Positions 1,951-40,249 of a stretch of DNA of 64,000 bases are shown piece by piece; the first letter of the stretch is position 1; each line of letters opens with the position of its first letter. The translations under genes and the position numbers were made by a program. The notes under the pieces were generated by a model, which saw nothing but the letters and a program-made list of their open reading frames with translations, ran no database searches and was not told where the DNA came from. The stretch is from Octopus sinensis (lineage: Eukaryota): positions 63,798,001 through 63,862,000 of the forward strand of contig NC_043004.1 in NCBI RefSeq assembly GCF_006345805.1. The letters run 5' to 3'.

Positions 1951-2029
1951 CTTGACAGCGGCTGGACGTGTTCCTCACTGCTCTGACAGTTCGGTGGCCG
2001 AAAGCCATAGAAACACTAATATGGGCCAG

Positions 2030-5750: not shown

Positions 5751-5883
5751 TAGATTGACTGAGGTAGTAATACGAGTCATAAAGGTCATTATTATGAGAT
5801 GATTATAAGATGATAATAATAATAAAGTAAGAGAATAAAACGAACCAATTGGTTTAAGCGTAGGCTATTCATCGTTTGAACAA
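5751..5883. repeat. Left copy of 133-bp inverted repeat bounding the Penelope-like element
   Basis: Reverse complement of 8828-8960, with about 11 mismatches and no net indel by hand alignment. Confidence 0.9.
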
Positions 5884-8827: not shown

Positions 8828-8960
8828 TTGTTCAAACGATGAATAATCAACGCGTAAACCAATTGGTTCGTTTTATTCTCTTACTTCATTATTATTATCA
8901 TCTTATAATCATCTCAAAATAATAAACGTTATGACTCGTATTACTACTTCAGTCAACCTA
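8828..8960. repeat. Right copy of 133-bp inverted repeat bounding the Penelope-like element
   Basis: ttgttcaaacgatgaata...cagtcaaccta is the reverse complement of 5751-5883. Confidence 0.9.
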
Positions 8961-8983
8961 CTACTTTAAGAAAAGTCTCCAAG

Positions 8984-11900
8984 AAAGTGTTTACTCAAAA
9001 ATAATTCACGAAGATATGGAGGGAAAAACAGCAAAATATCACAATTACAAAGAGTGTTTACTCAAAAATAATTCACGGAGATATGGAGGGAAAACAGCAA
9101 AATATCACATGTACAAAGTGTGTTTACTCAAAAATAATTCACGTTGATATGGAGGGAAAACAGCAAAATATCACTGTACAAAGAGTGTTTACTCAAAAAT
9201 AATTCACGTTGATATGGAGGGAAAACAGCAAAATATCACATGTACCAAAGATGTTTTACTCAAAAATAATATTCACGTTGATATGGAGGGAAAACAGCAA
9301 AATATCACATGTACAAAGAGTGTTTACTCAAAAATATTCACGGGCGATAAGGGGGAAAACAGCAATATCACATGTACAAAGTGTGTTTACTCAAAATAAT
9401 TCACCACGTTGATATGGAGGGAACCAGCAAAATATCACATGTACAAAGTGTGTTTACTCAAAATAATTCACGGCGATATGGAGGGAAAAAGCAAAATATC
9501 ACATGTAAAAGTGTGTTTACTCAAAAATAATTCACGTTGATATGGAGGGAAACAGCAAAATATCACATGTACAAAGAGTGTTTACTCAAAAATAATTCAC
9601 GTTTATATGGAGGGAAAACAGCAAAATATCACATGTACAAATGTGTTTACTCAAAAATAATTCACGGCGATATGAGGGAAAACAGCAAATATCACATGTA
9701 CAAGTGTGTTTACTCAAAAATAATTCACGGCGATATGGAGGGAAAACAGCAAAATATCACATGTACAAGTGTGTTTACTCAAAAATAATTCATGTTGATA
9801 TGGAGGGAAAACAGCAAAATATCACCATGTACAAAGTGTGTTTACTCAAAAATAATTCACGTTGATATGGAGGGAAAAACAGCAAATATCACATGTACAA
9901 AGTGTGTTTACTCAAAAATAATTCACGGCGATATGGAGGGAAAACAGCAAAATATCACATGTACAAAGTGTGTTTTTACTCAAAAATAATTCACGGTGAT
10001 ATGGAGGGAAAACAGCAGAATATCACATGTTACAAAGTGTGTTTACTCAAAAATAATTCAACGGCGATATGGAGGGAAACAGCAAAATATCACATGTACA
10101 AAGAGTGTTTACTCAAAATAATTCACGTTGATATGGAGGGAAAACAGCAAATATCACATGTACAAAGAGTGTTTACTCAAAAATATTCACGTTGATATGG
10201 AGGGAAAACAGCAAATATCACATGTACAAAAGTGTTTTTACTCAAAAAATAATTCACGGCGATATGGAGGGAAACAGCAAAATATCACATGTACAAAGAG
10301 TGTTTACTCAAAAATAATTCACGTTGATATGGGAAGGAAAACAGCAAAATATATCACATGTACAAAGTGTGTTTACTCAAAAAATAATTCACGGCGATAT
10401 GGAAGGAAACCAGCAAAATATCACAGGTACAAAGTGTGTTTACTCAAAAGTAAGTCACGTTGATATGGAGGGAAAACAGCAAAATATCACATGTACAAGT
10501 GTGTTTACTTAACTAATTCACGGCGATATGGAGGGAAAACAGCAAATATCACATGTACAAAGTGTGTTTACACAAAATAATTCACGTTGATATGGAGGGA
10601 AAACAGCAAAATATCACATGTACAAAGTGTGTTTACTCAGAATAATTCACGGCGCGATATGGAGGAAAACAGCAAAAATATCACATGTACAAAGAGTGTT
10701 TACTCAAAAATAATTCACGGGGCGATGGAGGGAAACAGCAAAATATCACATGTACAAAGAGTGTTTACACAAAAATAATTCACCGGCGATATGAGGGAAA
10801 ACAGCAAAATATCACATGCACAAAGAGTGTTTACTCAAAAATAATTTCACGTTGATATGGAGGGAAAGCAGCAAAATATCACATGTAAAGTGTGTTTTAC
10901 TCAAAAACAATTCACGGCGATATGGAGGGAAACAGCAAAATATCATATGTACAAAGAGTGTTTACTCAAAAATAATTCACGTTGATATGGAGGGAAAACA
11001 GCAAAATATCACATGTACAAAGTGGTGTTTAACTCAAAAATAATTCACTTTGATATGGAGGGAAACAGCAAAATATCACATGTACAAAGTGTGTTTGCTC
11101 AAAAATAATTCACGTTGATATGGAGGGAAAACAGCAATATCACATGTACAAATGTGTTTACTCAAAAATAATTCACGTTGATATGGAGGGAAAACAGCAA
11201 AATATCACATTGTACAAAGTGTGTTTACTCAAAAATAATTCACGGCGATATGGAGGGAAAAGAGCAAATATCACATGTACAAGTGTGTTTACTCAAAATA
11301 ATTCACGGCGATATGAGAGGAAAAACAGCAAAATATCACATGTACAAAGTGTGTTTACTCAAAATAATTCACGGCGATATGGAGGGAAAAGCAAATATCA
11401 CATGTACGGAAGGAGTTTTACTCAAACATAATTCACGTTGATATGGAGCGAAAACAGCAAAATATCACATGTACAAAGATTGTTTACTCAAATAATTCAC
11501 GTTGATATGGAGGAAAACAGCAAATATCACATGTACAAAGTGTGTTTACTCAAAATAATTCAAATAATTCACGGCGATATGGAGGAAAACAGCAAAATAT
11601 CACATGTAACAAAGAGTGTTTACTCAAAATATAATTCACGTTGATATGGAGGGAAAACAGCAAAATATCACATGTACAAAGTGTGTTTACTCAAAATAAT
11701 TCACGGCGATATGGAGGGAAAACAGCAAAATATCACATGTACAAAGTGTGTTTACTCAAAAATAATTCACGTTGATATGGAGGGAAAACAGCAAAATATC
11801 ACATGTACAAAGTGTGTTTACTCAAAAATGATTCCCGTTGATATGGAGGGAAAACAGCAAATATCACATGTACAAGTGTGTTTGCTCAAAAATAATTCAC

Positions 11901-14900
11901 GTTGATATGGAGGGAAAACAGCAAAATATCACATGTACAAATTGTGTTTACTCAAAAATAATTCCACGTTGATATGGAGGGAAAACAGCAAAATATCACA
12001 TGTACAAAGTATGTTTACTCAAAAATAATTCACGTCGATATGGAGGAAAAAGCAAATATATCACATGTCCAAAGTGTGTTTACTCAAAACTAATTCACGA
12101 AGATATGGAGGGTAAAAACAGCAAAATATCACATGTACAAAGTGTGTTTACTCAAAAATAATTCACGTTGATATGGAGGGAAAACAGCAATATCACATGC
12201 ACAATGTGTTTACTCAAAGTAATTCACGGCGATATGGAGGAAAAAACAGCAAAATATCACATGTACAAAAAGTGTTTACTCACAAACAATTCACGCGATA
12301 TGGAGGGAAAACAGCAAATATCACATGTTCAAAGTGTGTTTACTACAAAATAATTCACGGCGACATGAGGGAAACAAGCAAAATATCAAATGTACAAAGT
12401 GTTTTACTCAAAGAATAATTCACGGCGATATGGAGGGAAAACAGCAAAATATCACATGTACAAAGTGTGTTTACTCAAAAATAATTCACGTTGATATGGA
12501 GGGAAAACAGCAAATAACACATGTACAAAGTGTATTTACTCAAAAAATATTACGCCGGCGATATGGAGGGAAAACAGCAAAATATCACATGTACAAGTGT
12601 GTTTACTTCAAAAATATTATCACGTTGATATGGAGGGAAAACAGCAAAATATACATGTACAAAGATTGTTTACTCAAAAATAATTCACGTTGATATGGAG
12701 GGAAAACAGCAAAATAATCACATGTACAAAGTGTGTTTTACTCAAAAATATTTCACGGCGATATGGAGGGAAACAGCAAAATATCATATGTACAAAGAGT
12801 GTTTTACTCAAAAATAATCATGTTGATATGGAGGGAAACAGCAAATATCACTGTACAAAGTGTGTTTACTCAAAAATAATTCACGCGATATGGAGGGAAA
12901 ACAGCAAAATATCACATGTACAAGTGTGTTTTACTCAAAAATAATTCACGTTGATATGGAGGTAAAACAGCAAAATATCACATGTACAAAGTGTGTTTAC
13001 TCAAAATAATTCACGGCGATATGGAGGGAAACAGCAAATATCACATGTACAAAGGTGTTACTCAAAATAATTCACGGCGATATGAGGGAAACGCAGTAAA
13101 ATCATCATGTACAAAGTGCGTTTACTCAAAATAATTCACGTTGATATGGAGGGAAAACAGCAAAATATCACATGTACAAAGAGTGTTTACTCAAAAATAA
13201 TTCATGTGATATGGAGGGAAACAGCAAAATATCACATGTACAAAGTGTGTTACTCAAAATAATTCACGTCGATATGAGGGAAAACAGCAAAATATCACAT
13301 TTACAAAAGTGTGTTTACTCAAAAATAATTCACGTTGATATGGAGGGAAAACAGCAAAATATCACATTTACAAAGTGTGGCTTACTCAAAACTAATTCAC
13401 GAAGATATGGAGGTAAAACAGCAAAATATCACATGTACAAAGTGTTTTACTCAAAAATAATTCACGGCGATATGGAGGAAAACAGCAAATATCACAGGTA
13501 CAAAGAGTGTTTTACTCCAAACAATTCACGGCGATATGGAGGGAAAACAACAAAATATCACATGTTCAAAGTGTGTTTACTCAAAATAATTCACGGCGAC
13601 ATGGAGGGAAAACAGCAAAATATCACATGTACAAAGTGTGTCTCAAAAATATTCACGTTGATATTGGAGGGAAAACAGCAAAATATCACATGTACAAAGT
13701 GTGTTTACTCAAAAAAATAATTCACGTTGATATGGAGGAAAACAGCAACATATCAAATGTACAAAGTGTGTTTACTCAAGAATAATTCACGGCGATATGG
13801 AGGGAAAACAGCAAAATATCACATGTACAAAGTGTGTTTACTCAAAAATAATTCACGTTGATATGGAGGGAAAACAGCAATAACACATGTACAAAGTGTA
13901 TTTTACTCAAAAATAATTCACGGCGATATGGAGGGAAAACAGCAAATATCACATGTACAAAGTGTGTTTACTCAAAAATAATTCACGTTGATATGGAGGG
14001 AAACAGCAAAATATCACATGTACAAAGATTGTTTACTCAAAAATAATTCACGTTGATATGGAGGGAAACAGCAAATATCACATGTACAAAGTGTGTTTAC
14101 TCAAAATAATTCACGGCGATATGGAGGGAAAACAGCAAAATATCACATATGTACAAAGAGTGTTTACTCAAAATAATTCATGGCATGTTGATATGGAGGG
14201 AAACGCCAAAATCACAGTACAAGTGTGTTTACTCAAATAATTCACGGCGATATGGAGGGAAAACAGCAAATATCACATTTACAAAGTGGTGTTTGAATTT
14301 ACAAAGTACTCAACACTAATTCACGAAGATATGGAGGGTGAACAGCAAAATATCACATGTACAAAGTGTGTTTACTCAAAAATAATTCACGTTGATATGG
14401 AGGGAAAACAGCAAAATATCACAGGTACAAAGTGTGTTTACACTCAAAAATAATTCACGGCGATATGGATGGAAACAGCAAAATATCACATGTACAAAGA
14501 GTGTTTACTCAAAAATAATTCACGGCGATATGGAGGGAATCCAGTATAAATATCACATGTACAAAGTGCGTTACCACTCAAAAATATTCACGTTGATATG
14601 GAGGGAAAACAGCAAACTATCACATGTACAAAGAGTGTTTACTCAAATAATTCATGTTGATATGGAGGGAAAACAGCAAAATATCACATGTACAAATGTG
14701 TTTACTCAAAAATAATTCACGTTGATATGAGGGAAAACAGCAAAATATCACATTTACAAAGTGTGTTTACTCAAAATAATTCACGTTGATATGGAGGGAA
14801 AACAGCAAAATATCACATGTACAAAGTGTGTTTACTCAAAAATAATACAACGCGCGATATGGAGGAAAACAGCAAAATATCACATGTAGCTAAAGAGTTT

Positions 14901-17900
14901 TACTCAAAATAATTCAGCGGCGATATGGAGGGAACCAGCAAAATATCACTGTACAAAGTGTGTTTACTCAAAATTAATTCACGTTGATATGGGAGGGCTA
15001 AAACAGCAAAATATCACATGTACAAAGTGTGTTTACTCAAAACTAATTCACGAAGATATGGAGGGAAAACAGCAAAATATCACATGTACAAAGTGTGTTT
15101 TTACTCAAAAATAATCACGTTGATATTGAGGGGAAAACAGCAAAATATCACATGTACAAAGTGTGTTTACTCAAAAATAATTCACGGCGATATGGAGGGA
15201 AACAGCAAATATCACATGTACAAAGTAGTGTTTACTCAAAATAATTCATGTGATATGGAGGGAAAACAGCAAACATATCACATGTACAAAGTGTGTTTAC
15301 ACTCAAAAATAATTCACGGCGATTGGAGGGAAAAACAGCAAAATATCACATGTACAAAGTGTGTTACTCAAAAATAATTCACGGCGATATGGAGGGAAAC
15401 CAGCAAAATATCACATGTACAAGAGTGTTTACTCAAAAAAATTCAGTTGATATGGAGGGAAAACAGCAAAATATCACATGTACAAAGTGTGTTTACTCAA
15501 ACTAATTCACGGCGATATGGAGGAAAACAGCAAAATATCACATTACAAAGTGTGTTTACTCAAACTTTAACGATTGATATGGAGGGTAAACACAGCAATA
15601 TCACTGTGTACAAAGTGTGTTTACTCAAAAATAATTCACGTTGATATGAGGGAAAACAGCAAAATATCACAATGTACAAAGTGTGTTTACTCAAAAATAA
15701 TTCCGTTGATATGGAGGGAAAACAGCAAATATCACATGTACAAAGAGTGTTTACTCAAAAATAATTCACGGCGATATGGAGGGAAACCAGCAAAATATCA
15801 CATGTACAAAGTGGCTTTACTCAAAATAATTCACGTTGATATGGAGGGAAAAAAGCAAAATATCACATGTACAAAGTGTGTTTACTCAAAAATAATTCAT
15901 GTTGATATGGAGGGAAAACAGCAAAATATCACATGTACAAAGTGTTTTTACTCAAAAAATAATTCACGTTGATATGGAGGGAAAACAGCAAAATATCACA
16001 TTTACAAAGTGTGTTTACTCAAAAATAATTCACGTTGATATGGAGGGAAACAGCAAAATATCACATGTACAAAGTGTGTTTTACTCAAACTAATTCACGT
16101 TGATATGGAGGGTGAAACATCAAAATATCACTGTACAAAGTGTGTTTACTCAAAAATAATTCACGTTTGATATGGAGGGAAAACAGCAAAATATCACATG
16201 TACAAAGTGTGTTACTCAAAAATAATTCACGGCGATAAGGGGGGAAAACAGCAACTATCACATGTACAAAGAGTGTTTACTCAAAATAATTCACGGCTGA
16301 TATGGAGGGAAACCAGCAAAATATCACATGTACAAAGTGTGTTTACTCAAAATAATTCACGTTGATATGGAGGGAAAACAGCAAAATATCACATGTACAA
16401 AGTGTGTTTACTCAAAAATAATCACGAGTATATGGAGGGAAAAAGCAAAATATCACATGTACAAAGAGTGTTTACTCAAAATAATTCACGTTGATATGGA
16501 GGGAAAACAGCAACATATCACATGTACAAAGTGTGTTTACTCAAAAATAATTCACGTTGATAGGGAGGGAAAACAGCAAAATATCACATGTACAAAGTGT
16601 GTTTACTCAAAATAATTCCGTTTGATATGGAGGGAAAACACAAAATATCACATGTACAAAGTGTGTTTACTCAAAAATAATTCACGGCGATATGGAGGGA
16701 AAACAGCAAATATCACATGTACAAAATGTGTTTACTCAAAAATATTCACGGGAGATATGGAGGGAAAACAGTAAAATATCACATGTACAAAGTGTGTTAC
16801 TCAAAATAATTCACGCGATATGGAGGGAAAACAACAATATCACATGTACAAAGAGTGTTACTCAAAAATAATTCACGGTGGATATGGAGAGAAACAGCAA
16901 ATATCACATGTACAAAGAGTGTTTACTCAAAAATAATTCACGTTGATATGGAGGGACAACAGCAAATATCACAGTACAAAGTGTGTTTACTCAAAATAAT
17001 TCACGTTGATATGGAGGGGAAAACAGCAAAATATCACATGTACAAAGTGTGTTACTCAAAAATATTCACTGAGATATGGAGGGAGAAACAGCAAAATATC
17101 ACATGTACAAAGTTGTTTACTCAAAAATAATTCACGGTTGATATGGAGGGTAAACAGCAAATATCACATGTACAAAGTGTGTTTACTCAAAAATAATTCA
17201 CGGCGATATGGATGGAGGGAAAACAGCAAAATTCACATGTACAAAGAGTGTTTACTCAAAAATAATTCACGTTGATATGGAGGAAAACCGCAAATATCAC
17301 ATGTACAAAGTGTGTTACTCAAAAATAATTCACGGTGATATGGAGGGAAAAGCACGCAAATATCACATGTACAAAGTCTGTTTACTCACAAAATAATTCA
17401 CGGTTGATATGGAGGGAAACAGCAAATATCACATGTACAAGTGTGTTTACAGCAAAATAATTCACGGCGATATGGAGGGAAACAGCAAATATCACATGTA
17501 CAAGATGTGTTTTACTCAAAAATAATTCACGTTGATATGGAGGGAAAACAGCAAAATATCACATGTACAAAGTGTGTTTACTCAAAAATAATTCACGGGA
17601 TATGGAGGGAAAACAGCAAAATATCACATGTACAAAGTGTGTTTACTCAAAAATAATTCACGTTGATATGGAGGGAAAACAGCAAAATATCACATGTACA
17701 AGTGTGTTTACTCAAAAATAATTCACGTTGATATGGAGGGAAAACAGCAAAATATCACATGTACAAAGTGTGTTTACTCAAAAATAATTCACTTTGATAT
17801 GGAGGGGAAACAGCAAAATATCACATGTACAAAGTGTGTTTACTCAAAAATAATTCACGGCGATATGGAGGGAAAACAGCAAAATATCATGTACAAAGTG

Positions 17901-20900: not shown

Positions 20901-23900
20901 AATATCACATGTACAAAGTGTGTTTACTCAAAAATAATTCACGCGATATGGAGGGAAAACAGCAAAATATCACATGTAAAAAAGTGTGTTACTCAAAAAT
21001 AATTCACGGCGATATGGAGGGAAAACAGCAAAATATCACATGTACAAAGTGTGTTTACTCAAAAATAATTCACGTTGATATGGAGGGAAACAGCAAAATA
21101 TCACATGTACAAAGTGTGTTTACTCAAAAATAATTCACGTTGATATGGAGGGAAAACAGCAAAATATCACATGTACAAAGTGTGTTTACTCAAAAATAAT
21201 TCACGGCGATATGGAGGGAAAACAGCAAAATATCACATGTACAAAGTGTGTTTACTCAAAAATAATTCACGTTGATATGGAGGGAAAACAGCAAAATATC
21301 ACATGTACAAAGTGTGTTTACTCAAAAATAATTCACGTTGATATGGAGGGAAAACAGCAAAATCACATGTACAAAGTGTGTTTACTCAAAATAATTCACG
21401 TTGATATGGAGGGAAAACAGCAAAATATCACATGTACAAAGTGTGTTTACTCAAAAATAATTCACGTTGATATGGAGGGAAAACAGCAAAATATCACATG
21501 TACAAAGTGTGTTTACTCAAAATAATTCACGGCGATATGGAGGGAAAACAGCAAAATATCACATGTACAAAGAGTGTTTACTCAAAAATAATTCACGGCG
21601 ATATGGAGGGAAAACAGCAAAATATCACATGTACAAAGTGTGTTTACTCAAAAATAATTCACGGCGATATGGAGGGAAAACAGCAAAATATCACATGTAC
21701 AAAGAGTGTTTACTCAAAAATAATTCACGTTGATATGGAGGGAAAACAGCAAAATATCACATGTACAAAGAGTGTTTACTCAAAAATAATTCACGTTGAT
21801 ATGGAGGGAAAACAGCAAAATATCACATGTACAAAGTGTGTTTACTCAAAAATAATTCACGGCGATATGGAGGGAAAACAGCAAAATATCACATGTACAA
21901 AGTGTGTTTACTCAAAAATAATTCACGTTGATATGGAGGGAAAACAGCAAAATATCACATGTACAAAGTGTGTTTACTCAAAACTAATTCACGGCGATAT
22001 GGAGGGAAAACAGCAAAATATCACATGTACAAAGTGTGTTTACTCAAAAATAATTCACGTTGATATGGAGGGAAAACAGCAAAATATCACATGTACAAAG
22101 TGTGTTTACTCAAAAATAATTCACGGCGATATGGAGGGAAAACAGCAAAATATCACATGTACAAAGTGTGTTTACTCAAAAATAATTCACGTTGATATGG
22201 AGGGAAAACAGCAAATATCACATGTACAAAGTGGTTTACTCAAAAATAATCACGGCGATATGGAGGGAAAACAGCAAAATATCACATGTACAAAGTGTGT
22301 TTACTCAAAAATAATTCACGGCGATATGGAGGGAAAACAGCAAAATATCACATGTACAAAGTGTGTTTACTCAAAAATAATTCACGTTGATATGGAGGGA
22401 AAACAGCAAAATATCACATGTACAAAGTGTGTTTACTCAAAAATAATTCACGTTGATATGGAGGGAAAACAGCAAAATATCACATGTACAAAGTGTGTTT
22501 ACTCAAAAATAATTCACGTTGATATGGAGGGAAAACAGCAAAATATCACATGTACAAAGAGTGTTTACTCAAAAATAATTCACGTTGATATGGAGGGAAA
22601 ACAGCAAAATATCACATGTACAAAGTGTGTTTACTCAAAAATAATTCACTTTGATATGGAGGGAAAACAGCAAAATATCACATGTACAAAGTGTGTTTAC
22701 TCAAAACTAATTCACGAAGATATGGAGGGTAAAACAGCAAAATATCACATGTACAAAGTGTGTTTACTCAAAAATAATTCACGTTGATATGGAGGGAAAA
22801 CAGCAAAATATCACATGTACAAAGTGTGTTTACTCAAAATAATTCACGTTGATATGGAGGGAAAACAGCAAAATATCACATGTACAAAGTGTGTTTACTC
22901 AAAAATAATTCACGTTGATATGGAGGGAAAACAGCAAAATATCACATGTACAAAGTGTGTTTACTCAAAAATAATTCACGTTGATATGGAGGGAAAACAG
23001 CAAAATATCACATGTACAAAGTGTTTACTCAAAAATAATTCACGTTGATATGGAGGGAAAACAGCAAAATATCACATGTACAAAGTGTGTTTACTCAAAA
23101 ATAATTCACGTTGATATGGAGGGAAAACAGCAAAATATCACATGTACAAAGTGTGTTTACTCAAAAATAATTCACGAAGATATGGGGGGGAAAACAGCAA
23201 AATATCACATGTACAAAGTGTGTTTACTCAAAAATAATTCACGTTGATATGGAGGGAAAACAGCAAAATATCACATGTACAAAGTGTGTTTACTCAAAAA
23301 TAATTCACGTTGATATGGAGGGAAAACAGCAAAATATCACATGTACAAAGTGTGTTTACTCAAAAATAATTCACGGCGATATGGAGGGAAAACAGCAAAA
23401 TATCACATGTACAAAGTGTGTTTACTCAAAAATAATTCACGGCGATATGGAGGGAAAACAGCAAAATATCACATGTACAAAGTGTGTTTACTCAAAAATA
23501 ATTCACGGCGATATGGAGGGAAAACAGCAAAATATCACATGTACAAAGTGTGTTTACTCAAAAATAATTCACGGTGATATGGAGGGAAAACAGCAAAATA
23601 TCACATGTACAAAGTGTGTTTACTCAAAAATAATTCACGGCGATATGGAGGGAAAACAGCAAAATATCACATGTACAAAGAGTGTTTACTCAAAAATAAT
23701 TCACGTTGATATGGAGGGAAAACAGCAAAATATCACATGTACAAAGTGTGTTTACTCAAAAATAATTCACGTTGATATGGAGGGAAAACAGCAAAATATC
23801 ACATGTACAAAGTGTGTTTACTCAAAAATAATTCACGGCGATATGGAGGGAAAACAGCAAAATATCACATGTACAAAGTGTGTTTACTCAAAAATAATTC

Positions 23901-26900
23901 ACGTTGATATGGAGGGAAAACAGCAAAATATCACATGTACAAAGTGTGTTTACTCAAAAATAATTCACGTTGATATGGAGGGAAACAGCAAAATATCACA
24001 TGTACAAAGTGTGTTTACTCAAAAATAATTCACGGCGATATGGAGGGAAAACAGCAAAATATCACATGTACAAAGAGTGTTACTCAAAATAATTCACGTT
24101 GATATGGAGGGAAAACAGCAAAATATCACATGTACAAAGTGTGTTTACTCAAAAATAATTCACGTTGATATGGAGGGAAAACAGCAAAATATCACATGTA
24201 CAAAGTGTGTTACTCAAAAATAATTCACGTGATATGGAGGGAAAACAGCAAAATATCACATGTACAAAGTGTGTTTACTCAAAAATAATTCACGTTGATA
24301 TGGAGGGAAAACAGCAAAATATCACATGTACAAAGTGTGTTTACTCAAAAATAATTCACGTTGATATGGAGGGAAAACAGCAAAATATCACATGTACAAA
24401 GTGTGTTTACTCAAAAATAATTCACGTTGATATGGAGGGAAAACAGCAAAATATCACATGTACAAAGTGTGTTTACTCAAAAATAATTCACGGCGATATG
24501 GAGGGAAAACAGCAAAATATCACATGTACAAATGTGTTTACTCAAAAATAATTCACGGCGATATGGAGGGAAAACAGCAAAATATCACATGTACAAGGTG
24601 TGTTTACTCAAAAATAATTCACGGCGATATGGAGGGAAAACAGCAAATATCACATGTACAAAGTGTGTTTACTCAAAAATAATTCACGTTGATATGGAGG
24701 GAAAACAGCAAAATATCACATGTACAAAGTGTGTTTACTCAAAAATAATTCACGCGATATGGAGGGAAAACAGCAAAATCACATGTACAAAGTGTGTTTA
24801 CTCAAAAATAATTCACGTTGATATGGAGGGAAAACAGCAAAATATCACATGTACAAAGTGTGTTTACTCAAAATAATTCACGGCGATATGGAGGGAAAAC
24901 AGCAAAATATCACATGTACAAAGTGTGTTTACTCAAAAATAATTCACGTTGATATGGAGGGAAAACAGCAAAATATCACATGTACAAAGTGTGTTTACTC
25001 AAAATAATTCACGTTGATATGGAGGGAAAACAGCAAAATATCACATGTACAAAGGTGTTTACTCAAAAATAATTCACGTTGATATGGAGGGAAAACAGCA
25101 AAATATCACATGTACAAAGTGTGTTTACTCAAAATAATTCACGTTGATATGGAGGGGAAAACAGCAAAATATCACATGTACAAAGTGTGTTTACTCAAAA
25201 ATAATTCACGTTGATAGGATGGGGAAAACAGCAAAATATCACATGTACAAAGAGTGTTTACTCAAAAATAATTCACGTTGATATGGAGGGAAAACAGCAA
25301 AATATCACATGTACAAGAGTGTTTACTCAAAAATAATTCACGTTGATATGGAGGGAAAACAGCAAAATATCACATGTACAAAGAGTGTGTTACTCAAAAA
25401 TAATTCACGTTGATATGGAGGGAAAAACAGCAAAATATCACATGTACAAAGTGTGTTTACTCAAAAATAATTCACGGCGATATGGAGGGAAAACAGCAAA
25501 ATATCACATGTACAAAGTGTGTTTACTCAAAAATAATTCACGTTGATATGGAGGGAAACAGCAAAATATCACATGTACAAAGTGTGTGTTTACTCAAAAA
25601 TAATTCACGGCGATATAGGGAAAACAGCAAAATATCACATGTACAAAGTGTGTTTACTCAAAAATAATTCACGTTGATATGGAGGGAAAACAGCAAAATA
25701 TCACATGTACAAAGAGTGTTTACTCAAAAAATAATTCACGGCGATATGGAGGGAAAACAGCAAAATATCACATGTACAAAGTGTGTTTACTCAAAATAAT
25801 TCACGGCGATATGGAGGGAAAACAGCAAAATATCACATGTACAAAGTGTGTTTACTCAAAAATAATTCACGTTGATATGGAGGGAAAACAGCAAAATATC
25901 ACATGTACAAAGAGTGTTTACTCAAAAATAATTCACGGCGATATGGAGGGAAAACAGCAAAATATCACATGTACAAAGTGTGTTTACTCAAAAATAATTC
26001 ACGGCGATATGGAGGGAAAACAGCAAAATATCACATGTACAAAGTGTGTTTACTCAAAAATAATTCACGTTGATATGGAGGGAAAACAGCAAAATATCAC
26101 ATGTACAAAGTGTGTTTACTCAAAAATAATTCACGGCGATATGGAGGGAAAACAGCAAAATATCACATGTACAAAGTGTGTTTACTCAAAAATAATTCAC
26201 GTTATATGGAGGGAAAACAGCAAAATATCACATGTACAAAGTGTGTTTACTCAAAAATAATTCACGTTGATATGGAGGGAAAACAGCAAAATATCACATG
26301 TACAAAGTGTGTTTACTCAAAATAATTCACGGCGATATGGAGGGAAAACAGCAAAATATCACATGTACAAAGAGTGTTTACTCAAAAATAATTCACGGCG
26401 ATATGGAGGGAAAACAGCAAAATATCACATGTACAAAGTGTGTTTACTCAAAAATAATTCACGTTGATATGGAGGGAAACAGCAAAATATCACATGTACA
26501 AAGTGTGTTTACTCAAAAATAATTCACGGCGATATGGAGGGAAAACAGCAAAATATCACATGTACAAAGAGTGTTTACTCAAAAATAATTCACGTTGATA
26601 TGGAGGGAAAACAGCAAAATATCACATGTACAAAGTGTGTTTACTCAAAAATAATTCACGTTGATATGGAGGGAAAACAGCAAAATATCACATGTACAAA
26701 GTGTGTTTACTCAAAAATAATTCACGTTGATATGGAGGGAAAACAGCAAAATATCACATGTACAAAGTGTGTTTACTCAAAAATAATTCACGTTGATATG
26801 GAGGGAAAACAGCAAAATATCACATGTACAAAGTGTGTTTACTCAAAAATAATTCACGTTGATATGGAGGGAAAACAGCAAAATATCACATGTACAAAGT

Positions 26901-29900
26901 GTGTTTACTCAAAAATAATTCACGTTGATATGGAGGGAAAACAGCAAAATATCACATGTACAAAGTGTGTTTACTCAAAAAAATTCACGTTGATATGGAG
27001 GGAAAACAGCAAAATATCACATGTACAAAGTGTGTTTACTCAAAATAATTCACGGCGATATGGAGGGAAAACAGCAAAATATCACATGTACAAAGAGTGT
27101 TTACTCAAAATAATTCACGGCGATATGGAGGGAAAACAGCAAAATATCACATGTACAAAGTGTGTTTACTCAAAAATAATTCACGTTGATATGGAGGGAA
27201 AACAGCAAAATATCACATGTACAAAGAGTGTTTACTCAAAAATAATTCACGCGATATGGAGGGGGAAAACAGCAAAATATCACATGTACAAAGAGTGTTT
27301 ACTCAAAAATAATTCACGGCGATATGGAGGGAAAACAGCAAAATATCACATGTACAAAGTGTGTTTACTCAAAAATAATTCACGTTGATATGGAGGGAAA
27401 CAGCAAAATATCACATGTACAAAGAGTGTTTACTCAAAATAATTCACGTTGATATGGAGGGAAAACAGCAAAATATCACATGTACAAGTGTGTTTACTCA
27501 AAAATAATTCACGGCGATATGGAGGGAAAACAGCAAAATATCACATGTACAAAGTGTGTTTACTCAAAAATAATTCACGTTGATATGGAGGGAAAACAGC
27601 AAAATATCACATGTACAAAGAGTGTTTACTCAAAAATAATTCACGGCGATATGGAGGGAAAACAGCAAAATATCACATGTACAAAGAGTGTTTACTCAAA
27701 AATAATTCACGGCGATATGGAGGGAAAACAGCAAAATATCACATGTACAAAGTGTGTTTACTCAAAAATAATTCACGTTGATATGGAGGGAAAACAGCAA
27801 AATATCACATGTACAAAGAGTGTTTACTCAAAAATAATTCACGTTGATATGGAGGGAAAACAGCAAAATATCACATGTACAAAGTGTGTTTACTCAAAAA
27901 TAATTCACGGCGATATGGAGGGAAAACAGCAAAATATCACATGTACAAAGTGTGTTTACTCAAAAATAATTCACGTTGATATGGAGGGAAAACAGCAAAA
28001 TATCACATGTACAAAGAGTGTTTACTCAAAAATAATTCACGGCGATATGGAGGGAAAACAGCAAAATATCACATGTACAAAGTGTGTTTACTCAAAAATA
28101 ATTCACGGCGATATGGAGGGAAAACAGCAAAATATCACATGTACAAAGAGTGTTTACTCAAAAATAATTCACGTTGATATGGAGGGAAAACAGCAAAATA
28201 TCACATGTACAAAGTGTGTTTACTCAAAAATAATTCACGTTGATATGGAGGGAAAACAGCAAAATATCACATGTACAAAGTGTGTTTACTCAAAAATAAT
28301 TCACGTTGATATGGAGGGAAAACAGCAAAATATCACATGTACAAAGTGTGTTTACTCAAAAATAATTCACGTTGATATGGAGGGAAAACAGCAAAATATC
28401 ACATGTACAAAGAGTGTTTACTCAAAAATAATTCACGTTGATATGGAGGGAAAACAGCAAAATATCACATGTACAAAGTGTGTTTACTCAAAAATAATTC
28501 ACGTTGATATGGAGGGAAAACAGCAAAATATCACATGTACAAAGTGTGTTTACTCAAAAATAATTCACGTTGATATGGAGGGAAAAACAGCAAAATATCA
28601 CATGTACAAAGAGTGTTTACTCAAAAATAATTCACGTCGATATGGAGGGAAAACAGCAAAATATCACATGTACAAAGGTGTTTACTCAAAAATAATTCAC
28701 GTTGATATGGGGGAAAACAGCAAAATATCACATGTACAAAGTGTGTTTACTCAAAAATAATTCACGTTGATATGGAGGGAAAACAGCAAAATATCACATG
28801 TACAAAGAGGTGTTTACTCAAAAATAATTCACGCGATATGGAGGGAAAACAGCAAAATATCACATGTACAAAGTGTGTTTACTCAAAAATAATTCACGTT
28901 GATATGGAGGGAAAACAGCAAAATATCACATGTACAAAGTGTGTTTACTCAAAAATAATTCACGGCGATATGGAGGGAAAACAGCAAAATATCACATGTA
29001 CAAAGAGTGTTTACTCAAAAATAATTCACGTTGATATGGAGGGAAAACAGCAAAATATCACATGTACAAAGAGTGTTTACTCAAAAATAATTCACGGCGA
29101 TATGGAGGGAAAACAGCAAAATATCACATGTACAAAGTGTGTTTACTCAAAAATAATTCACGTTGATATGGAGGGAAAACAGCAAAATATCACATGTACA
29201 AAGTGTGTTTACTCAAAAATAATTCACGTTGATATGGAGGGAAAACAGCAAAATATCACATGTACAAAGAGTGTTTACTCAAAAATAATTCACGTTGATA
29301 TGGAGGGAAAACAGCAAAATATCACATGTACAAAGTGTGTTTACTCAAAAATAATTCACGGCGATATGGAGGGAAAACAGCAAAATATCACATGTACAAA
29401 GAGTGTTTACTCAAAAATAATTCACGGCGATATGGAGGGAAAACAGCAAAATATCACATGCAACAAAGTGTTTTACTCAAAAATAATTCACGGCGATATG
29501 GAGGGAAAACAGCAAAATATCACATGTACAAAGGTGTTTACTCAAAAATAATTCACGTTGATATGGAGGGAAAACAGCAAAATATCACATGTACAAAGTG
29601 TGTTTACTCAAAAATAATTCACAGCGATATGGAGGGAAAACAGCAAAATATCACATGTACAAAGTGTGTTTACTCAAAAATAATTCACGATTGATATGGA
29701 GGGAAAACAGCAAAATATCACATGTACAAAGTGTGTTTACTCAAAAAATTCACGTTGATATGGAGGGAAAACAGCAAATATCACATGTACAAAGAGTGTT
29801 TACTCAAAATAATTCACGTTGATATGGAGGGAAAACAGCAAAATATCACATGTACAAAGAGTGTTTACTCAAAAATAATTCACGGCGATATGGAGGGAAA

Positions 29901-32239
29901 ACAGCAAAATATCACATGTACAAAGTGTGTTTACTCAAAAATAATTCACGTTGATATGGAGGGAAAACAGCAAAATATCACATGTACAAAGAGTGTTTAC
30001 TCAAAAATAATTCACGGCGATATGGAGGGAAAACAGCAAAATATCACATGTACAAAGAGTGTTTACTCAAAAATAATTCACGGCGATATGGAGTGAAAAC
30101 AGCCAAATATCACATGTACAAAGAGTGTTTACTCAAAAATAATTCACGTTGATATGGAGGGAAAACAGCCAAATATCACAATTACAAAGAGTGTTTACTC
30201 AAAAATAATTCACGTTGATATGGAGGGAAAACAGCAAAATATCACATGTACAAAGTGTGTTTACTCAAAAATAATTCACGGCGATATGGAGGGAAAACAG
30301 CAAAATATCACATGTACAAAGTGTGTTTACTCAAAAATAATTCACGTTGATATGGAGGGAAAACAGCAAAATATCACATGTACAAAGAGTGTTTACTCAA
30401 AAATAATTCACGGCGATATGGAGGGAAAACAGCAAAATATCACATGTACAAAGTGTGTTTACTCAAAAATAATTCAGGGCGATATGGAGTGAAAACAGCC
30501 AAATATCACATGTACAAAGAGTGTTTACTCAAAAATAATTCACGTTGATATGGAGGGAAAACAGCCAAATATCACAAGTACAAAGAGTGTTTACTCAAAA
30601 ATAATTCACGTTGATATGGAGGGAAAACAGCAAAATATCACATGTACAAAGTGTGTTTACTCAAAAATTATTCACGTTGATATGGAGGGAAAACAGCAAA
30701 ATATCACATGTACAAAGAGTGTTTACTCAAAAATAATTCACGTTGATATGGAGGGAAAACAGCAAAATATCACATGTACAAAGAGTGTTTACTCAAAAAT
30801 AATTCACGTTGATATGGAGGGAAAACAGCAAAATATCACATGTACAAAGAGTGTTTACTCAAAAATAATTCACGTTGATATGGAGGGAAAACAGCAAAAT
30901 ATCACATGTACAAAGAGTGTTTACTCAAAAATAATTCACGTTGATATGGAGGGAAAACAGCAAAATATCACATGTACAAAGAGTGTTTACTCAAAAATAA
31001 TTCACGTAGATATGGAGGGAAAACAGCAAAATATCACATGTACAAAGAGTGTTATTCTCAAAAATAATTCACGTAGATATGGTGGGAAAAACAGCAAAAT
31101 ATCACATGTACAAAGAGTGTTTACTCAAAAATAATTCACATAGATATGGAGGGAAAACAGCAAAATATCACATGTACAAAGAGTGTTTACTCAAAAATAA
31201 TTCACGGCGATATGGAGGGAAAACAGCAAAATATCACATGTACAAAGTGTGTTTACTCAGACATAATTCACGTTGATATGGAGGGAAAACAGCAAAATAT
31301 CACATGTACAAAGTGTGTTTACTGAAAAATAATTCACTGCGATATGGAGGGAAAACAGCAAAATATCACATGTACAAAGTGTGTTTACTCCAAAATAATT
31401 CACGTTGATATGGAGGGAAAACAGCAAAATATCACATGTACAAAGAGTGTTTTACTCAAAAATAATTCACGGCGATATGGAGGGAAAACAGCAAAATATC
31501 ACATGTACAAAGTGTGTTTACTCAAAAATAATTCACGGCGATATGAGTGGAAAACAGCAAAAATACATGTACAAAGTGTGTTTACTCAAAAATAATTCAC
31601 GTTGATATGGAGGGAAAACAGCAAAATATCACATGTACAAAGTGTGTTTACTCAAAAATAATTCACGTTGATATGGAGGGAAAACAGCAAAATATCACAT
31701 GTACAAAGTGTGTTTACTCAAAAATAATTCACGTTGATATGGAGGGAAAACAGCAAAATATCACATGTACAAAGAGTGTTTACTCAAAAATAATTCACGT
31801 TGATATGGAGGGAAAACAGCAAAATATCACATGTACAAAGTGTGTTTACTCAAAAATAATTCACGTTGATATGGAGGGAAAACAGCAAAATATCACATGT
31901 ACAAAGAGTGTTTACTCAAAAATATTCACGTTGATATGGAGGGAAAACAGCCAAATATCACATGTACAAAGAGTGTTTACTCAAAAATAATTCACGTTGA
32001 TATGGAGGGAAAACAGCCAAATATCACATGTACAAAGAGTGTTTACTCAAAAATAATTCACATAGATATGGAGGGAACAACAGCAAAATATCACATGTAC
32101 AAAGAGTGTTTACTCAAAAATAATTCACGTAGATATGGAGGGAAAACAGCAAAATATCACATGTACAAAGAGTGTTATTCTCAAAAATAATTCATGAAGA
32201 TATGGAGGGAAAAACAGCAAAATATCACATGCACAAAGA
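8984..32239 (+). repeat. Tandem satellite, 66-bp monomer, about 350 copies
   Basis: Consensus GGAGGGAAAACAGCAAAATATCACATGTACAAAG(T/A)GTGTTTACTCAAAAATAATTCACG(TT/GC)GATAT; 22-codon periodicity in the ORF track; copy number is span divided by 66. Confidence 0.98.
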
Positions 32240-32240
32240 T

Positions 32241-32332
32241 TCTTTGTACATGTGATATTTTGCTGTTTTCTCTCTATATCTACGTGAATTATTTTTGATT
32301 AAACACTATCTGGGAGACTTTTCTTAAAGTAG
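32241..32332 (-). repeat. Right terminal inverted arm: 20-bp cap plus one inverted satellite monomer
   Basis: Its reverse complement aligns to 8961-9053 with about 9 differences. Confidence 0.92.
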
Positions 32333-32857
32333 TAGAAATGGCTAAAAATACATTTTGGCTGCTATTTCTAAAAAATTCAGTATGTGGCAAAGTAAGTTAT
32401 TTTACTGAGCCCTAATTATATAACGTAATATATATATATATATATATATATATACAGGGTGACCATGAAGTCACGCACTATCCTGCAGTAGATGAAATTA
32501 CTAACAATCTCTCTTTTCACAACTACCGCTATTACTCACAAACTAGTCCTCATTCGATGGATGCAGATAATCAACAAGACGTGGGTAAGGTAATGGTGGG
32601 GTGTAGGAATTGGCACAATCATGTAACTGAATACCTTTAAAACTGTGAGCTAGTATCTTTCAGTAGGTTTCTTACTCTTGAGTAATCAATCGATGGATGT
32701 TTCTCTGAAAATGATATCTGATGTTAGGGTGTGCAGCAAGATCAACCTTCCTTACGTTGGAGAATATATTCCAATGTGGGTTTCAAACGAGATTTAAAGT
32801 TTGCCAGCTATTTAGGGAGACTGATGTATGTACATATGTATGTACATATACATACAT

Positions 32858-37727: not shown

Positions 37728-38120
<393 letters not shown>

Positions 38121-38489
38121 CTGTTTGTTTGTCTATCTGTCTGTGTATCTCTTCGTCTGAATGTGTGCAAAAAAGTGCTGCAGCCGATGAAAATGTATAA
38201 AGTGTCGGAATATTGTTGTCAGTCTCTGGTAATATACTGACACATGAAAACATTGGCATCACTTCCGGCATCATCACCTGAACCGCAGAATACCTTCATC
38301 ACGAGAGCTACGTACATTCTGGTATAAGTTGGTGGCGACGAAATATGAAATTTTAGTGCAAAAACTTTAATGGCGAATAAATATTATGCAAAACCCGAAC
38401 GAAGAAATATAGAATTACTTCTCTGCTCGATGGCATTAGCCAGCAGATTGTAGCTGTTTCTGATTTAGATTGAGCGATACTGGTATCAA

Positions 38490-39335: not shown

Positions 39336-40249
39336 GTGAATGGGCATCCATCGAGACCTTTCAACATTGTACGTTCGGACCGTCAGTAATGCCCCCTCTC
39401 GTCGCTTCTGTACGTATTGACACTCGAGCCACTACTGCGGAAGCTGGCGACGCTGAGGGGCATCCCCCAAGAACTGGGGTGCGGGACGAGCGTGTCCGCA
39501 TACACGGACGACGTAACGGTCATAGTGTCTAGCCACAAGTACATCGAGCTGCTAGGCTAGACGCTGAAAGACTATGAAGCTGTGACGGGAGCGAAAATCA
39601 ACCTGGAAAATCGGTGGGCTCAGGTGCTTGGCACCTGGAGAAGCAAACCCATGCCGTCCGGCAGCGCCTCAGTAGTTGGATGCTGGACGGACGGACCGGT
39701 TATGTTCCTCGGCGTCTGATGAGGTCCGGACCTCCAAACGGGGAAGAACTGGGACCAGATAACGACAAGGGTGGCCACGAAAACCCGCTGAAAGAAGAGC
39801 TGGGCATGCCGCAGTTGATGATGCGCAGACAAGCGCTGTGACTGCGACATCTCCGGCTCTCCGTGGATGACGGTGAGCCGTTTGTGAGGCGCGCTTTCTC
39901 GCAGCTTGTCTCCATAACTGAGCTGCAGTCGTGGATCAAGAAGAGGCCGAGGAAGGGCGGATGGCACCGCGAGTCTCAGGTTGCTCTCGAGCAAATCTGC
40001 AGTCCCGGATCAGCATTCTATTGGTGATTAGTGGAGGGGAGGTACGACGACGATCTCTGGGCGAAGCTGGGCGAAGCTGGGCGAAGCTGGGCGAAGCTGG
40101 GCGAAGCTGGACGAAGCTGGGCGAAGCTGGGCGAAGCTGGGCGAAGCTGGGCGTCGACGAGGAATACCTGACACGCCTGTTCATGACGATTTCGGGCCGG
40201 GACCTATGGACAACTTCCAGAGATCCCTGGTTAGGCATTGCTATCAAGA
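39336..40249 (+). mobile_element. Tx1/L1-clade LINE reverse-transcriptase fragment, decayed
   Basis: Frame-broken translation VNGHPSRPFNIVRSDRQ*CPLSSLLYVLTLEPLLRKL...SVSAYTDDVTVIV...YEAVTGAKINLEKS...FLGV..GPDLQ (QGCPLS and YADD motifs); GC-rich relative to flanks. Confidence 0.78.
40057..40153 (+). repeat. 10-bp minisatellite (GCGAAGCTGG)x9 inside the Tx1 fragment
   Basis: Nine units at 40061-40150, one with a G>A variant. Confidence 0.97.

What the first reader, a model, noticed from the sequence alone, without database searches (positions are those of the whole stretch)
8959..32334. A 23-kb satellite array grown inside one arm of a TA-inserting TIR transposon
Seen: a perfect 20-bp terminal inverted repeat (CTACTTTAAGAAAAGTCTCC) with TA on both outer sides. 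Directly inside each cap the 66-bp monomer begins, about 350 times in the left arm and once, inverted, in the right arm. The monomer is therefore a subterminal repeat of the TIR itself. Established: foldback-type elements with internally repetitive TIRs can seed satellites (e.g. Tetris in Drosophila virilis), and mollusc satellites are often carried by Helentron-derived HINE/pearl-like elements, which have a different, subterminal-IR structure. Inference: this is a non-autonomous TA-targeting DNA transposon whose transposase-binding subterminal repeat underwent runaway, one-sided amplification, giving a mobile or once-mobile satellite cassette. I do not recognise the family.
Basis: partly seen in the sequence, partly recalled or inferred. 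Interest (0 to 1): 0.85.

Follow-up and report, generated by a model that had tools for sequence, protein, structure and literature searches.

The report
Private 66-bp array in retroelement arm
A 23-kb run of 66-bp repeats in an octopus chromosome grew on the spot from a normally single-copy piece of a common interspersed repeat; the "transposon ends with TA" that seemed to frame it are not ends, so this is an ordinary case of a mobile element seeding a tandem array.

Summary
There are 354 copies of a 66-bp unit (8987-32238), a perfect 20-bp inverted "cap" on each side, and one inverted monomer on the right.

The cap is not a terminus. In about 800 other genomic copies the homology runs 96-190 bp beyond the cap and stops at a (TA)n tract. 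The window's right arm does this too (to 32431, then (AT)13). On the left, the "TA" is the last two bases of a separate 3.2-kb Penelope-like element (5751-8960) that abuts the cap. So there is no TA target-site duplication and no 20-bp TIR transposon.

The monomer is positions 217-282 of a ~566-bp dispersed repeat and occurs once per arm everywhere else. The monomer-to-monomer junction (268 of 268) and the array's derived variants (212 of 212) exist only at this locus. The first and last monomers share a private haplotype, which indicates amplification in place beside a strong palindrome centre.

The host family shows four features: 3' ends anchored in (TA)n, variable 5' truncation, invariant head-to-tail partial tandems, and head-to-head inverted copies. 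This is the published architecture of Penelope-like (Naiad-type) insertions, so it is probably a non-autonomous retroelement. No autonomous partner was found.

This is a new member of a known kind, of modest interest.

The parts
5751..8960 (-). Separate canonical Penelope-like retroelement (RT then C-terminal GIY-YIG, ORF broken over several frames) with 133-nt inverted terminal repeats at 5751-5883 and 8828-8960. Its terminus abuts the left cap and supplies the left 'TA'.
   Evidence: ORFs and Pfam GIY-YIG PF01541. Inverted repeat I1, 133 nt, 92%. The 133-nt module has over 1000 candidate copies, and genome hits stop at window 8960.
8958..8986 (+). Stump of the left arm: CTA, the 20-bp cap (8961-8980) and a 6-nt linker, equal to family unit positions 189-216. 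The outer 96+ bp of this arm is missing.
   Evidence: BLAST of the arm consensus against the window matches positions 189-283 at 8958-9053 and finds no outer arm anywhere upstream. Family hits start at 8958.
8987..32238 (+). Tandem array of about 352-354 copies of a 66-bp monomer, equal to family unit positions 217-282. The interior is dominated by derived variants (CGTTGAT, CGGCGAT), the edges keep ancestral-like states, and there is no higher-order repeat.
   Evidence: The junction 28-mer gives 268 genome hits and 268 window hits. The derived-variant 29-mer gives 212 genome hits and 212 window hits.
32239..32242 (.). Centre of the palindrome, the head-to-head junction of the two arms. The last left monomer and the single right monomer form a roughly 68-bp stem with a 3-nt loop.
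   Evidence: DNA fold of 32150-32335: -51 kcal/mol, z = -13.9 against shuffles.
32243..32431 (-). Right arm: one inverted monomer, linker, cap (32313-32332) and the outer arm (32333-32431), equal to family unit positions about 290 down to 93, 95.5% identical to the consensus arm.
   Evidence: BLAST places arm positions 93-290 at 32431-32234. The outer sequence matches other copies.
32428..32454 (.). (AT)13 microsatellite at the true outer end of the right arm, the family's usual boundary.
   Evidence: TRF. 74 of 90 unique arm ends abut (TA)>=4 against a 1.7% background.

Best explanation
The 23-kb array is a single-locus tandem amplification of a 66-bp segment that is normally single-copy. The segment is positions 217-282 of a ~566-bp interspersed repeat family in a genome whose statistics match Octopus sinensis.

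SHOWN: The locus began as a head-to-head (convergent) pair of two truncated copies of that family, a very common arrangement for it. The innermost 66 bp of the left copy lies right beside the palindrome centre. That segment was duplicated and then expanded in place, and the expansion did not spread to any other locus.

SHOWN: The 20-bp 'cap' is an internal part of the family unit (positions 192-211). The right arm runs on to its normal end at an (AT)n tract. The left arm's outer part is missing, and a separate Penelope-like element ends exactly there. So the flanking TAs are not a target-site duplication.

INFERRED (mechanism): The roughly 68-bp perfect hairpin at the junction provoked replication slippage or template switching that made the first duplication. 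Unequal sister-chromatid exchange or slippage then expanded and homogenised the interior, while the two edge monomers kept the original haplotype.

INFERRED (host family): It is most likely a non-autonomous retroelement mobilised by a Penelope-like (Naiad-type) reverse transcriptase/endonuclease.
For: The array and cap are real.

The cap is a dispersed repeat: 267 hits at <=1 mismatch and 784 for a 24-mer at <=2 mismatches. Sequence outside the cap is conserved in all 29 other sampled loci.

The window's right arm matches unit positions 93-290 and the left arm only 189-283.

Left boundary: a 133-nt terminal inverted repeat of a GIY-YIG/RT element ends at 8960. Genome hits to 8871-9050 fall into two exclusive classes that meet at 8958-8960.

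In-place, private amplification: the junction 28-mer gives 268 of 268 hits in the window and the derived variants 212 of 212. The monomer is single-copy per arm in about 60 other loci. The 23-nt haplotype GAAGATATGGAGGGAAAAACAGC occurs only in the first and last monomers, and the ancestral GTA state occurs only near the right edge. The junction hairpin folds at -51 kcal/mol, z = -13.9.

Family class: 90 unique arm ends fall at unit positions 1-8 (45) or 88-104 (45). Of these, 74 abut (TA)>=4 against a 1.7% background. Inner ends are variable. The head-to-tail junction ...GGAATTGTAT|TATCAATAAT... recurs in 12 of 16 loci (one variant), always as a 5'-truncated copy followed by a full copy. At least six loci show an inverted truncated copy, then a truncated copy, then a full copy (L001, L006, L010, L067 twice, L068). 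Close pairs are convergent or direct, never divergent, in the first 100 places. The outer-arm 24-mer has 8167 hits against 784 for the cap.

These are the features published for PLE insertions, including (TA)n bias in Naiads and non-autonomous derivatives that form head-to-tail copies (PMC8557442).
Against: Naiads are reported as old remnants in cephalopods (PMC8557442), whereas many copies here are 92-98% identical to the consensus.

The copy-number gradient is not clean. The 24-mer at positions ~330-353 has 771 hits, about the same as the cap, and the 28 hits at positions ~515-538 partly reflect a poorly conserved probe.

No target-site duplications can be read because of the (TA)n flanks.

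Why the left outer arm is missing is only inferred (a deletion accompanying the Penelope-like insertion).

The role of the hairpin in starting the duplication is an inference from position alone.

The indel-rich left third of the array may be assembly noise.
Confidence: 0.65

Rival explanations
1. One reading: a non-autonomous, TA-targeting cut-and-paste DNA transposon bounded by the 20-bp cap, whose transposase-binding subterminal repeat amplified on one side to give a mobile satellite cassette.
For: There is a perfect 20-bp inverted repeat with TA outside each copy. The cap and monomer co-occur at many loci, often as convergent pairs.
Against: Family homology continues 96-190 bp outside the cap in every other copy and in the window's own right arm. 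The left TA belongs to the Penelope-like element's terminus. The monomer is single-copy elsewhere and the tandem junction is unique to this locus. No transposase was seen.
Confidence: 0.03
2. The host family is a DNA-level foldback or long-TIR MITE that inserts into TA/(TA)n. Its long arms are eroded by hairpin-driven and (TA)n-mediated deletions. The array arose in one arm by the same local slippage and unequal exchange.
For: Convergent inverted arms are very common and divergent pairs are not seen at short range. (TA)n lies on both sides. No RT partner, poly-A tail, tRNA head or ribozyme was found. The short (position 93) end could arise by deletion between the flanking (TA)n and the internal TTATATAA.
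Against: The two outer ends (positions 1 and 93) are equally frequent, even within one element. Inner junctions are sharp and strongly asymmetric, for example 247|428, 308|103 and 199|543. Many single arms are truncated inward at variable points with unrelated flanks. Invariant head-to-tail junctions are always preceded by a truncated copy. These patterns are hard to obtain from a transposase acting on defined termini.
Confidence: 0.2
3. The host family is a SINE-like partner of a microsatellite-targeting LINE, for example the Dong/R4 lineage that is abundant and recently active in octopus. Head-to-head pairs would then be made by twin priming on the self-complementary (TA)n target.
For: The family shows 3' anchoring in a microsatellite, 5' truncation and inverted pairs. 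Dong-R4 LINEs are reported as abundant recent insertions in O. vulgaris (PMC13282606).
Against: Invariant partial tandems, together with the triple arrangement of an inverted copy, a truncated copy and a full copy, are the hallmark described for PLEs rather than LINEs (PMC8557442). No tRNA/5S/7SL head was found. Dong-type elements are known (from my own knowledge) for (TAA)n rather than (TA)n.
Confidence: 0.1
4. An assembly artefact: the array's size, or the junction at 8960, is a product of long-read mis-assembly or poor polishing.
For: The left ~8.5 kb has about 3 indel positions per monomer, typical of unpolished PacBio consensus. The genome statistics match a PacBio CLR plus Hi-C assembly.
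Against: There are no gaps. The variation is ordered: ancestral states sit at both edges, the first and last monomers share a private haplotype, and two interspersed variants fill the interior. The junction at 8960 coincides with the exact end of a repeat family and shows 3-nt microhomology, which is not what a random chimeric join would give.
Confidence: 0.07

Closest known systems
Penelope-like element insertion architecture, especially Naiads and their non-autonomous derivatives (Craig, Yushenova, Rodriguez & Arkhipova 2021, PMC8557442)
   Same: The family shows frequent 5' truncation. It forms partial head-to-tail tandems in which a truncated copy precedes a full copy (pseudo-LTR). An inverted 5'-truncated copy often abuts the 5' end, giving flanking inverted repeats. 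It has a strong (TA)n insertion bias that hides target-site duplications, and no hammerhead ribozyme. Non-autonomous derivatives that form multicopy head-to-tail insertions are described in that paper.
   Different: The unit is only ~566 nt and non-coding. No autonomous partner with the same 3' end has been identified. There are two alternative 3' ends (unit positions 1 and 93). Cephalopod Naiads are reported as ancient remnants, yet these copies look fairly young.
Satellites seeded by foldback or MITE elements (Tetris in Drosophila virilis; the Xenopus MITE-derived satellite cited in the retrozyme preprint)
   Same: A tandem array is homologous to part of the inverted arm of a dispersed mobile element, and arrays and dispersed copies coexist in one genome.
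   Different: In those cases the internal tandem repeats are a regular feature of many element copies, and the satellite sits at many loci. Here every other copy has one monomer per arm and the array is at a single locus. The host element is probably a retroelement, not a DNA transposon.
Non-LTR retrozymes, tandem PLE-derived repeats (bioRxiv 10.64898/2026.07.22.740005)
   Same: They are short non-coding units related to PLE biology that occur head-to-tail, and they are proposed to seed minisatellite-like arrays by local amplification.
   Different: Retrozymes are defined by a type I hammerhead ribozyme in each unit. None was detected here at E <= 1. The amplified 66-bp unit is a sub-segment and not the whole element.
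Helentron-derived HINE/pearl/CvA elements carrying mollusc satellites
   Same: They are mollusc interspersed elements associated with tandem repeats.
   Different: Those have subterminal inverted repeats, T-T insertion and a central tandem-repeat core in most copies. None of these was seen here, and the boundaries here are (TA)n.

Membership tests
TA-duplicating TIR DNA transposon / MITE (Tc1-mariner/Stowaway type) | The inverted repeats are the outermost bases of the mobile unit | tested here: not met
   Homology continues 96-190 bp outside the cap in 29 of 29 other loci and in the window's right arm.
TA-duplicating TIR DNA transposon / MITE (Tc1-mariner/Stowaway type) | A TA target-site duplication flanks both termini | tested here: not met
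   The left TA is the end of the Penelope-like element's 133-nt terminal repeat. The right TA is internal to the family unit.
TA-duplicating TIR DNA transposon / MITE (Tc1-mariner/Stowaway type) | An autonomous relative encodes a DDE transposase between the same ends | not tested
   None was seen in about 250 kb of sampled loci.
Foldback elements with internally repetitive arms (FB/Tetris type) | The arms are built from tandem subrepeats in most copies, with variable repeat number | tested here: not met
   There is one monomer per arm in all ~60 other loci. The monomer-monomer junction is found only in the window.
Foldback elements with internally repetitive arms (FB/Tetris type) | Long inverted arms of unequal, variable length with conserved outer ends | tested here: met
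   Convergent arms have junctions anywhere from unit position ~100 to ~540, and the outer ends fall at positions 1 or 93.
Foldback elements with internally repetitive arms (FB/Tetris type) | A fixed-length target-site duplication | tested here: inconclusive
   The flanks are (TA)n in 74 of 90 ends, so no duplication can be read.
Penelope-like (PLE) type insertions / non-autonomous PLE derivative | 3'-anchored copies with frequent, variable 5' truncation | tested here: met
   The outer (3') ends are fixed at positions 1 or 93 and the inner ends are variable. The outer 24-mer has 8167 hits against 784 for the cap. The gradient further in is confounded.
Penelope-like (PLE) type insertions / non-autonomous PLE derivative | Partial head-to-tail tandems: a truncated copy precedes a full-length copy (pseudo-LTR) | tested here: met
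   The same junction ...GGAATTGTAT|TATCAATAAT... recurs in 12 of 16 loci (one variant). The upstream copy is truncated at positions 71-393 and the downstream copy is full length.
Penelope-like (PLE) type insertions / non-autonomous PLE derivative | An inverted 5'-truncated copy adjacent to the 5' end | tested here: met
   About 21 of about 45 unique sampled loci are head-to-head pairs. At least six show inverted copy | truncated copy | full copy. No close divergent pairs appear in the genome-wide listings. L056/L057 are two copies back-to-back at their position-93 ends.
Penelope-like (PLE) type insertions / non-autonomous PLE derivative | Microsatellite insertion bias ((TA)n for Naiads) | tested here: met
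   44 of 45 position-93 ends and 30 of 45 position-1 ends abut (TA)>=4 against a 1.7% background.
Penelope-like (PLE) type insertions / non-autonomous PLE derivative | The 3' end is shared with an autonomous RT + GIY-YIG element | not testable with these tools
The PLE copies in hand (window, L071, L077) share no sequence with the unit.
Non-LTR retrozyme | A type I hammerhead ribozyme in each repeat unit | tested here: not met
   There is no hammerhead hit at E <= 1 in four loci with full units, nor in the window.
tRNA/5S/7SL-derived SINE | A Pol III head homologous to a small RNA | tested here: not met
   Rfam gives no tRNA, 5S or 7SL match in full units.
Satellite DNA derived from a transposable element | The monomer is homologous to a segment of a dispersed element and is arranged head-to-tail | tested here: met
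   The monomer equals unit positions 217-282. There are 354 tandem copies.
Satellite DNA derived from a transposable element | Arrays at several loci or a chromosome-scale distribution | tested here: not met
   All 268 junction matches and all 212 derived-variant matches in the 2.72-Gb assembly lie in this window. Collapsed or unassembled arrays cannot be excluded.

The most novel reading that the evidence does not exclude
The ~566-nt family (about 800 copies that include the cap region, about 8000 copies of its 3' module) may be a previously undescribed, ribozyme-less, non-autonomous partner of a (TA)n-targeting Naiad-type Penelope-like element that was active fairly recently in octopus. This would run contrary to the view that cephalopod Naiads are only ancient remnants. 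The perfect palindromes that PLE integration leaves at head-to-head junctions would then act as birth sites for new satellites, and this locus would show one caught at the single-locus stage.
Probability: 0.3. Interest if true: 0.5.

Novelty: new member of a known kind. Interest (0 to 1): 0.3.

Why it matters
The locus is a clean example of a tandem array at its birth stage. It sits at one locus, its source segment is still identifiable, ancestral states survive at both edges, and it lies directly beside a strong palindrome. It also shows that apparent "TIR + TA" boundaries read from one locus can be created by a truncated arm meeting another element's end. If the host family proves to be a Penelope-like non-autonomous element, it would add material for the poorly understood PLE integration mechanism, in particular the tandem/inverted structures and the microsatellite bias. 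It would also help annotate the many unclassified "SINEs" of octopus genomes. None of this changes current concepts.

Tried and rejected
1. Hammerhead ribozyme / retrozyme idea: Rfam at E <= 1 on four loci with full units, on the whole window and on the Penelope-like element gave only microsatellite-driven miRNA false positives.

2. tRNA-type SINE head: none found.

3. Search for the missing left outer arm: it is absent from the window and from 20 kb upstream. Only an unrelated, ~70%-identical convergent copy lies about 19 kb upstream.

4. Long 'internal' sequences behind single caps (L031-L036) as candidate autonomous elements: homology between copies ends 100-355 bp inside the cap, and there is no shared coding region.

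5. Higher-order repeat structure in the array: none found.

6. Copy-number gradient by equal-length 24-mers: the values are 8167, 784, 771 and 28. The first step is informative. The rest is confounded by probe conservation and subfamily structure.

7. A whole-monomer distance analysis of the edge monomers was spoiled by phase drift. It was replaced by exact diagnostic strings.

9. The DNA-mode genome search with a monomer dimer does not report the array itself because repeats are masked. Pattern counts were used instead.
Full report
**Observation.** The window holds one long tandem array at 8987-32238. TRF reports period 66, 354.0 copies and 92% matches. The 20-mer CTACTTTAAGAAAAGTCTCC occurs exactly twice, at 8961-8980 (+) and 32313-32332 (-), and none is expected by chance. 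TA lies outside both copies, and a single inverted monomer lies inside the right one. The left/right inverted repeat in fact extends about 96 nt at about 90% identity, covering cap, a 6-nt linker and one monomer. The window has no gaps. One caveat applies. The left ~8.5 kb carries about 3 indel positions per monomer against 0.2-1.1 further right. In a long-read assembly this may partly be consensus noise.

**Source genome.** G000 has 2,719,151,902 bases in 13,516 sequences. A published table gives 13,516 scaffolds and 2719.2 Mb for the PacBio/Hi-C assembly of Octopus sinensis (PMC10700109). The window is therefore very probably from chromosome-scale scaffold 8 of that assembly.

**The cap is not a terminus.**
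- The cap is a dispersed repeat. It has 267 matches at <=1 mismatch and 784 for a 24-mer that includes it at <=2 mismatches.
- In all 29 other sampled loci the sequence outside the cap is conserved (...agccatttcta|CAP). It continues outward for 96 or 190 bp and then stops at a (TA)n tract.
- The window's right arm does the same. It matches the family consensus from unit position 290 out to position 93 (window 32234-32431, 95.5%) and is followed by (AT)13 at 32428-32454.
- The right-hand "TA" is therefore internal element sequence.
- The left arm matches only positions 189-283, starting at 8958.

**The left boundary is the end of another element.**
- Positions 5751-8960 hold reverse-transcriptase-like and GIY-YIG (PF01541) open frames on the minus strand.
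- This stretch is framed by 133-nt inverted terminal repeats at 5751-5883 and 8828-8960, 92% complementary. That makes it a canonical C-terminal-endonuclease Penelope-like element (PLE).
- The 133-nt module is itself highly repeated, with over 1000 candidates.
- A query spanning the junction (8871-9050) returns two exclusive classes of genome hits. One covers 8871-8960 and the other covers 8958-9050, and none crosses.
- The left "TA" is thus the PLE's last two bases, or part of a 3-nt CTA microhomology. It is not a target-site duplication.
- The left arm's outer 96+ bp is absent from the window and from 20 kb upstream.
- I infer, but have not shown, that it was lost when the PLE integrated.

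**The array is private and grew in place.**
- The monomer equals unit positions 217-282 of the family and is present once per arm in about 60 other loci.
- A 28-mer across the monomer-monomer junction has 268 matches in the whole genome (all forward strand) and 268 in the window.
- A 29-mer specific for the array's derived variants (CG[GT][CT]GAT) has 212 in the genome and 212 in the window.
- Within the array the interior is dominated by two interspersed derived variants (GTT 182, GGC 103), with no higher-order period.
- The family's ancestral GTA state survives only near the right edge.
- The 23-nt haplotype GAAGATATGGAGGGAAAAACAGC occurs exactly twice, in the first and the last monomer.
- Edge copies that share a private haplotype around a homogenised interior are what expansion from one original monomer by unequal exchange predicts.
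- The array ends at the head-to-head junction of the two arms. There the last left monomer and the right monomer form a roughly 68-bp hairpin at -51 kcal/mol, z = -13.9.
- I infer that this palindrome provoked the first slippage or template-switch duplication.
- Nothing suggests that the array or its monomers ever moved.

**What the host family is.** A ~566-bp unit was reconstructed from the outer 191 bp, the cap, the monomer and about 290 bp of inner sequence. Among 90 unique arm ends, 45 lie at unit positions 1-8 and 45 at positions 88-104. Of these, 74 abut (TA)>=4 against a background of 1.7%. Twelve of the other 16 are one recurring head-to-tail junction...GGAATTGTAT|TATCAATAAT....

The inner ends vary. 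Single arms stop anywhere between about positions 217 and 570, often against unrelated DNA. Head-to-head pairs switch strand sharply and often asymmetrically, for example 247|428, 308|103 and 199|543.

In tandems the upstream copy is always the truncated one and the downstream copy is full length. At least six independent loci show the triple arrangement of inverted truncated copy, truncated copy and full copy. Close pairs are convergent or direct and never divergent in the first 100 places of two genome-wide listings. In the sampled loci, L056/L057 show two copies back-to-back at their position-93 ends. The outermost module is about ten times more abundant than the cap region, 8167 against 784.

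Read with the sense strand as the reverse complement of the arm, this describes a 3'-anchored, 5'-truncated element. It is primed in (TA)n, or at an internal UAUAUAA for the position-93 end. It forms pseudo-LTR tandems and carries inverted 5'-truncated partners.

That is the architecture described for Penelope-like elements. The (TA)n bias is reported for Naiads, which also lack hammerheads, and non-autonomous derivatives that make head-to-tail copies are described (PMC8557442). No hammerhead or tRNA-like head is present.

I therefore rank "non-autonomous PLE-type retroelement" first at about 0.6. A DNA foldback/MITE eroded by hairpin and (TA)n deletions follows at about 0.2, and a LINE-dependent SINE with twin priming at about 0.1. 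The decisive piece is an autonomous element sharing the 3' end. The one extra locus fetched was just another truncated copy embedded in (TA)n.

**Comparison with known systems.** The general phenomenon is well known: a tandem array seeded by part of a mobile element. In Tetris-type elements many copies carry tandem subrepeats in their arms, and here only this locus does. Helentron/HINE features were not seen. The retrozyme definition (a hammerhead in each unit) is not met. The locus is best filed as a new example of a TE-derived, single-locus minisatellite-like array. It sits in a copy of a probably PLE-mobilised non-autonomous family.

**Verdict.** Its specific claims are refuted, namely the 20-bp TIR, the TA target-site duplication, the DNA-transposon class, the pre-existing subterminal repeat and the mobile cassette. 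This is a new member of a known kind, with interest about 0.3. The most novel reading not excluded is that the family is an undescribed non-autonomous Naiad-type partner that was recently active in octopus, with head-to-head junction palindromes acting as satellite birth sites (probability about 0.3).

Noticed in passing
window 5751-8960: A Penelope-like element (RT-like frames plus a C-terminal GIY-YIG domain, ORF split over at least four frames) has 133-nt inverted terminal repeats. The 133-nt module has over 1000 candidate copies, some as inverted pairs only ~76 bp apart (e.g. C1:143897343/143897547). Rfam finds no hammerhead ribozyme at E <= 1, although canonical PLEs are said to carry one.
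   Followed up: partly
window 672-2015 (-), with 131-175, 2031-2204, 2604-2807: A LINE reverse-transcriptase C-terminus (RVT_1, zf-RVT) lies next to long (TTA)n/(ATT)n tracts. It may be a microsatellite-associated LINE such as the Dong/R4 type reported as active in octopus.
   Followed up: no
window 18252-31990 (e.g. 21471-22787): Because 66 bp equals 22 codons and one frame lacks stops, the array gives open frames up to 438 aa (repeating ...IIHVDMEGKQQNITCTKCVYSK...). These are by-products of the repeat, not genes, and could mislead gene predictors.
   Followed up: partly
L076 8993-9099 (+) and 9369-9555 (-) = C8:63,786,993-63,787,555: An older (~70% identical) convergent pair of the same family's outer arms lies about 19 kb upstream of the array. 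It is not the missing left arm.
   Followed up: partly
window 42125-42484; 40057-40153; 37728-38122: Other tandem repeats are present: a 182-bp unit x2 (89%), a 10-bp minisatellite CTGGGCGAAG x9.7, and (ATCT)100. The window is generally very rich in di- and tetranucleotide microsatellites.
   Followed up: no
window 8987-17400 versus 17400-32238: The left third of the array has about 3 indel positions per monomer and jittering monomer lengths (61-74 bp). The rest is nearly all 65-66 bp. This is either an older, decayed part or poorly polished long-read consensus.
   Followed up: partly
genome-wide: The exact cap variant CTACTTTAAG... is a minority subfamily (34 exact copies). Most copies carry CTACTATAAG... 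A third variant...AAGAAGAGTCTCC, also recurs, so the family has several subfamilies.
   Followed up: no
L056/L057 (C10:35,666,201 and 35,670,606): At the inner end of two copies the unit's first 13 nt form a small palindrome (TATCAATAATAAA-T(n)-TTTATTATTGATA) followed by (TA)n. This is a mini head-to-head junction right at the element's 3' end.
   Followed up: no
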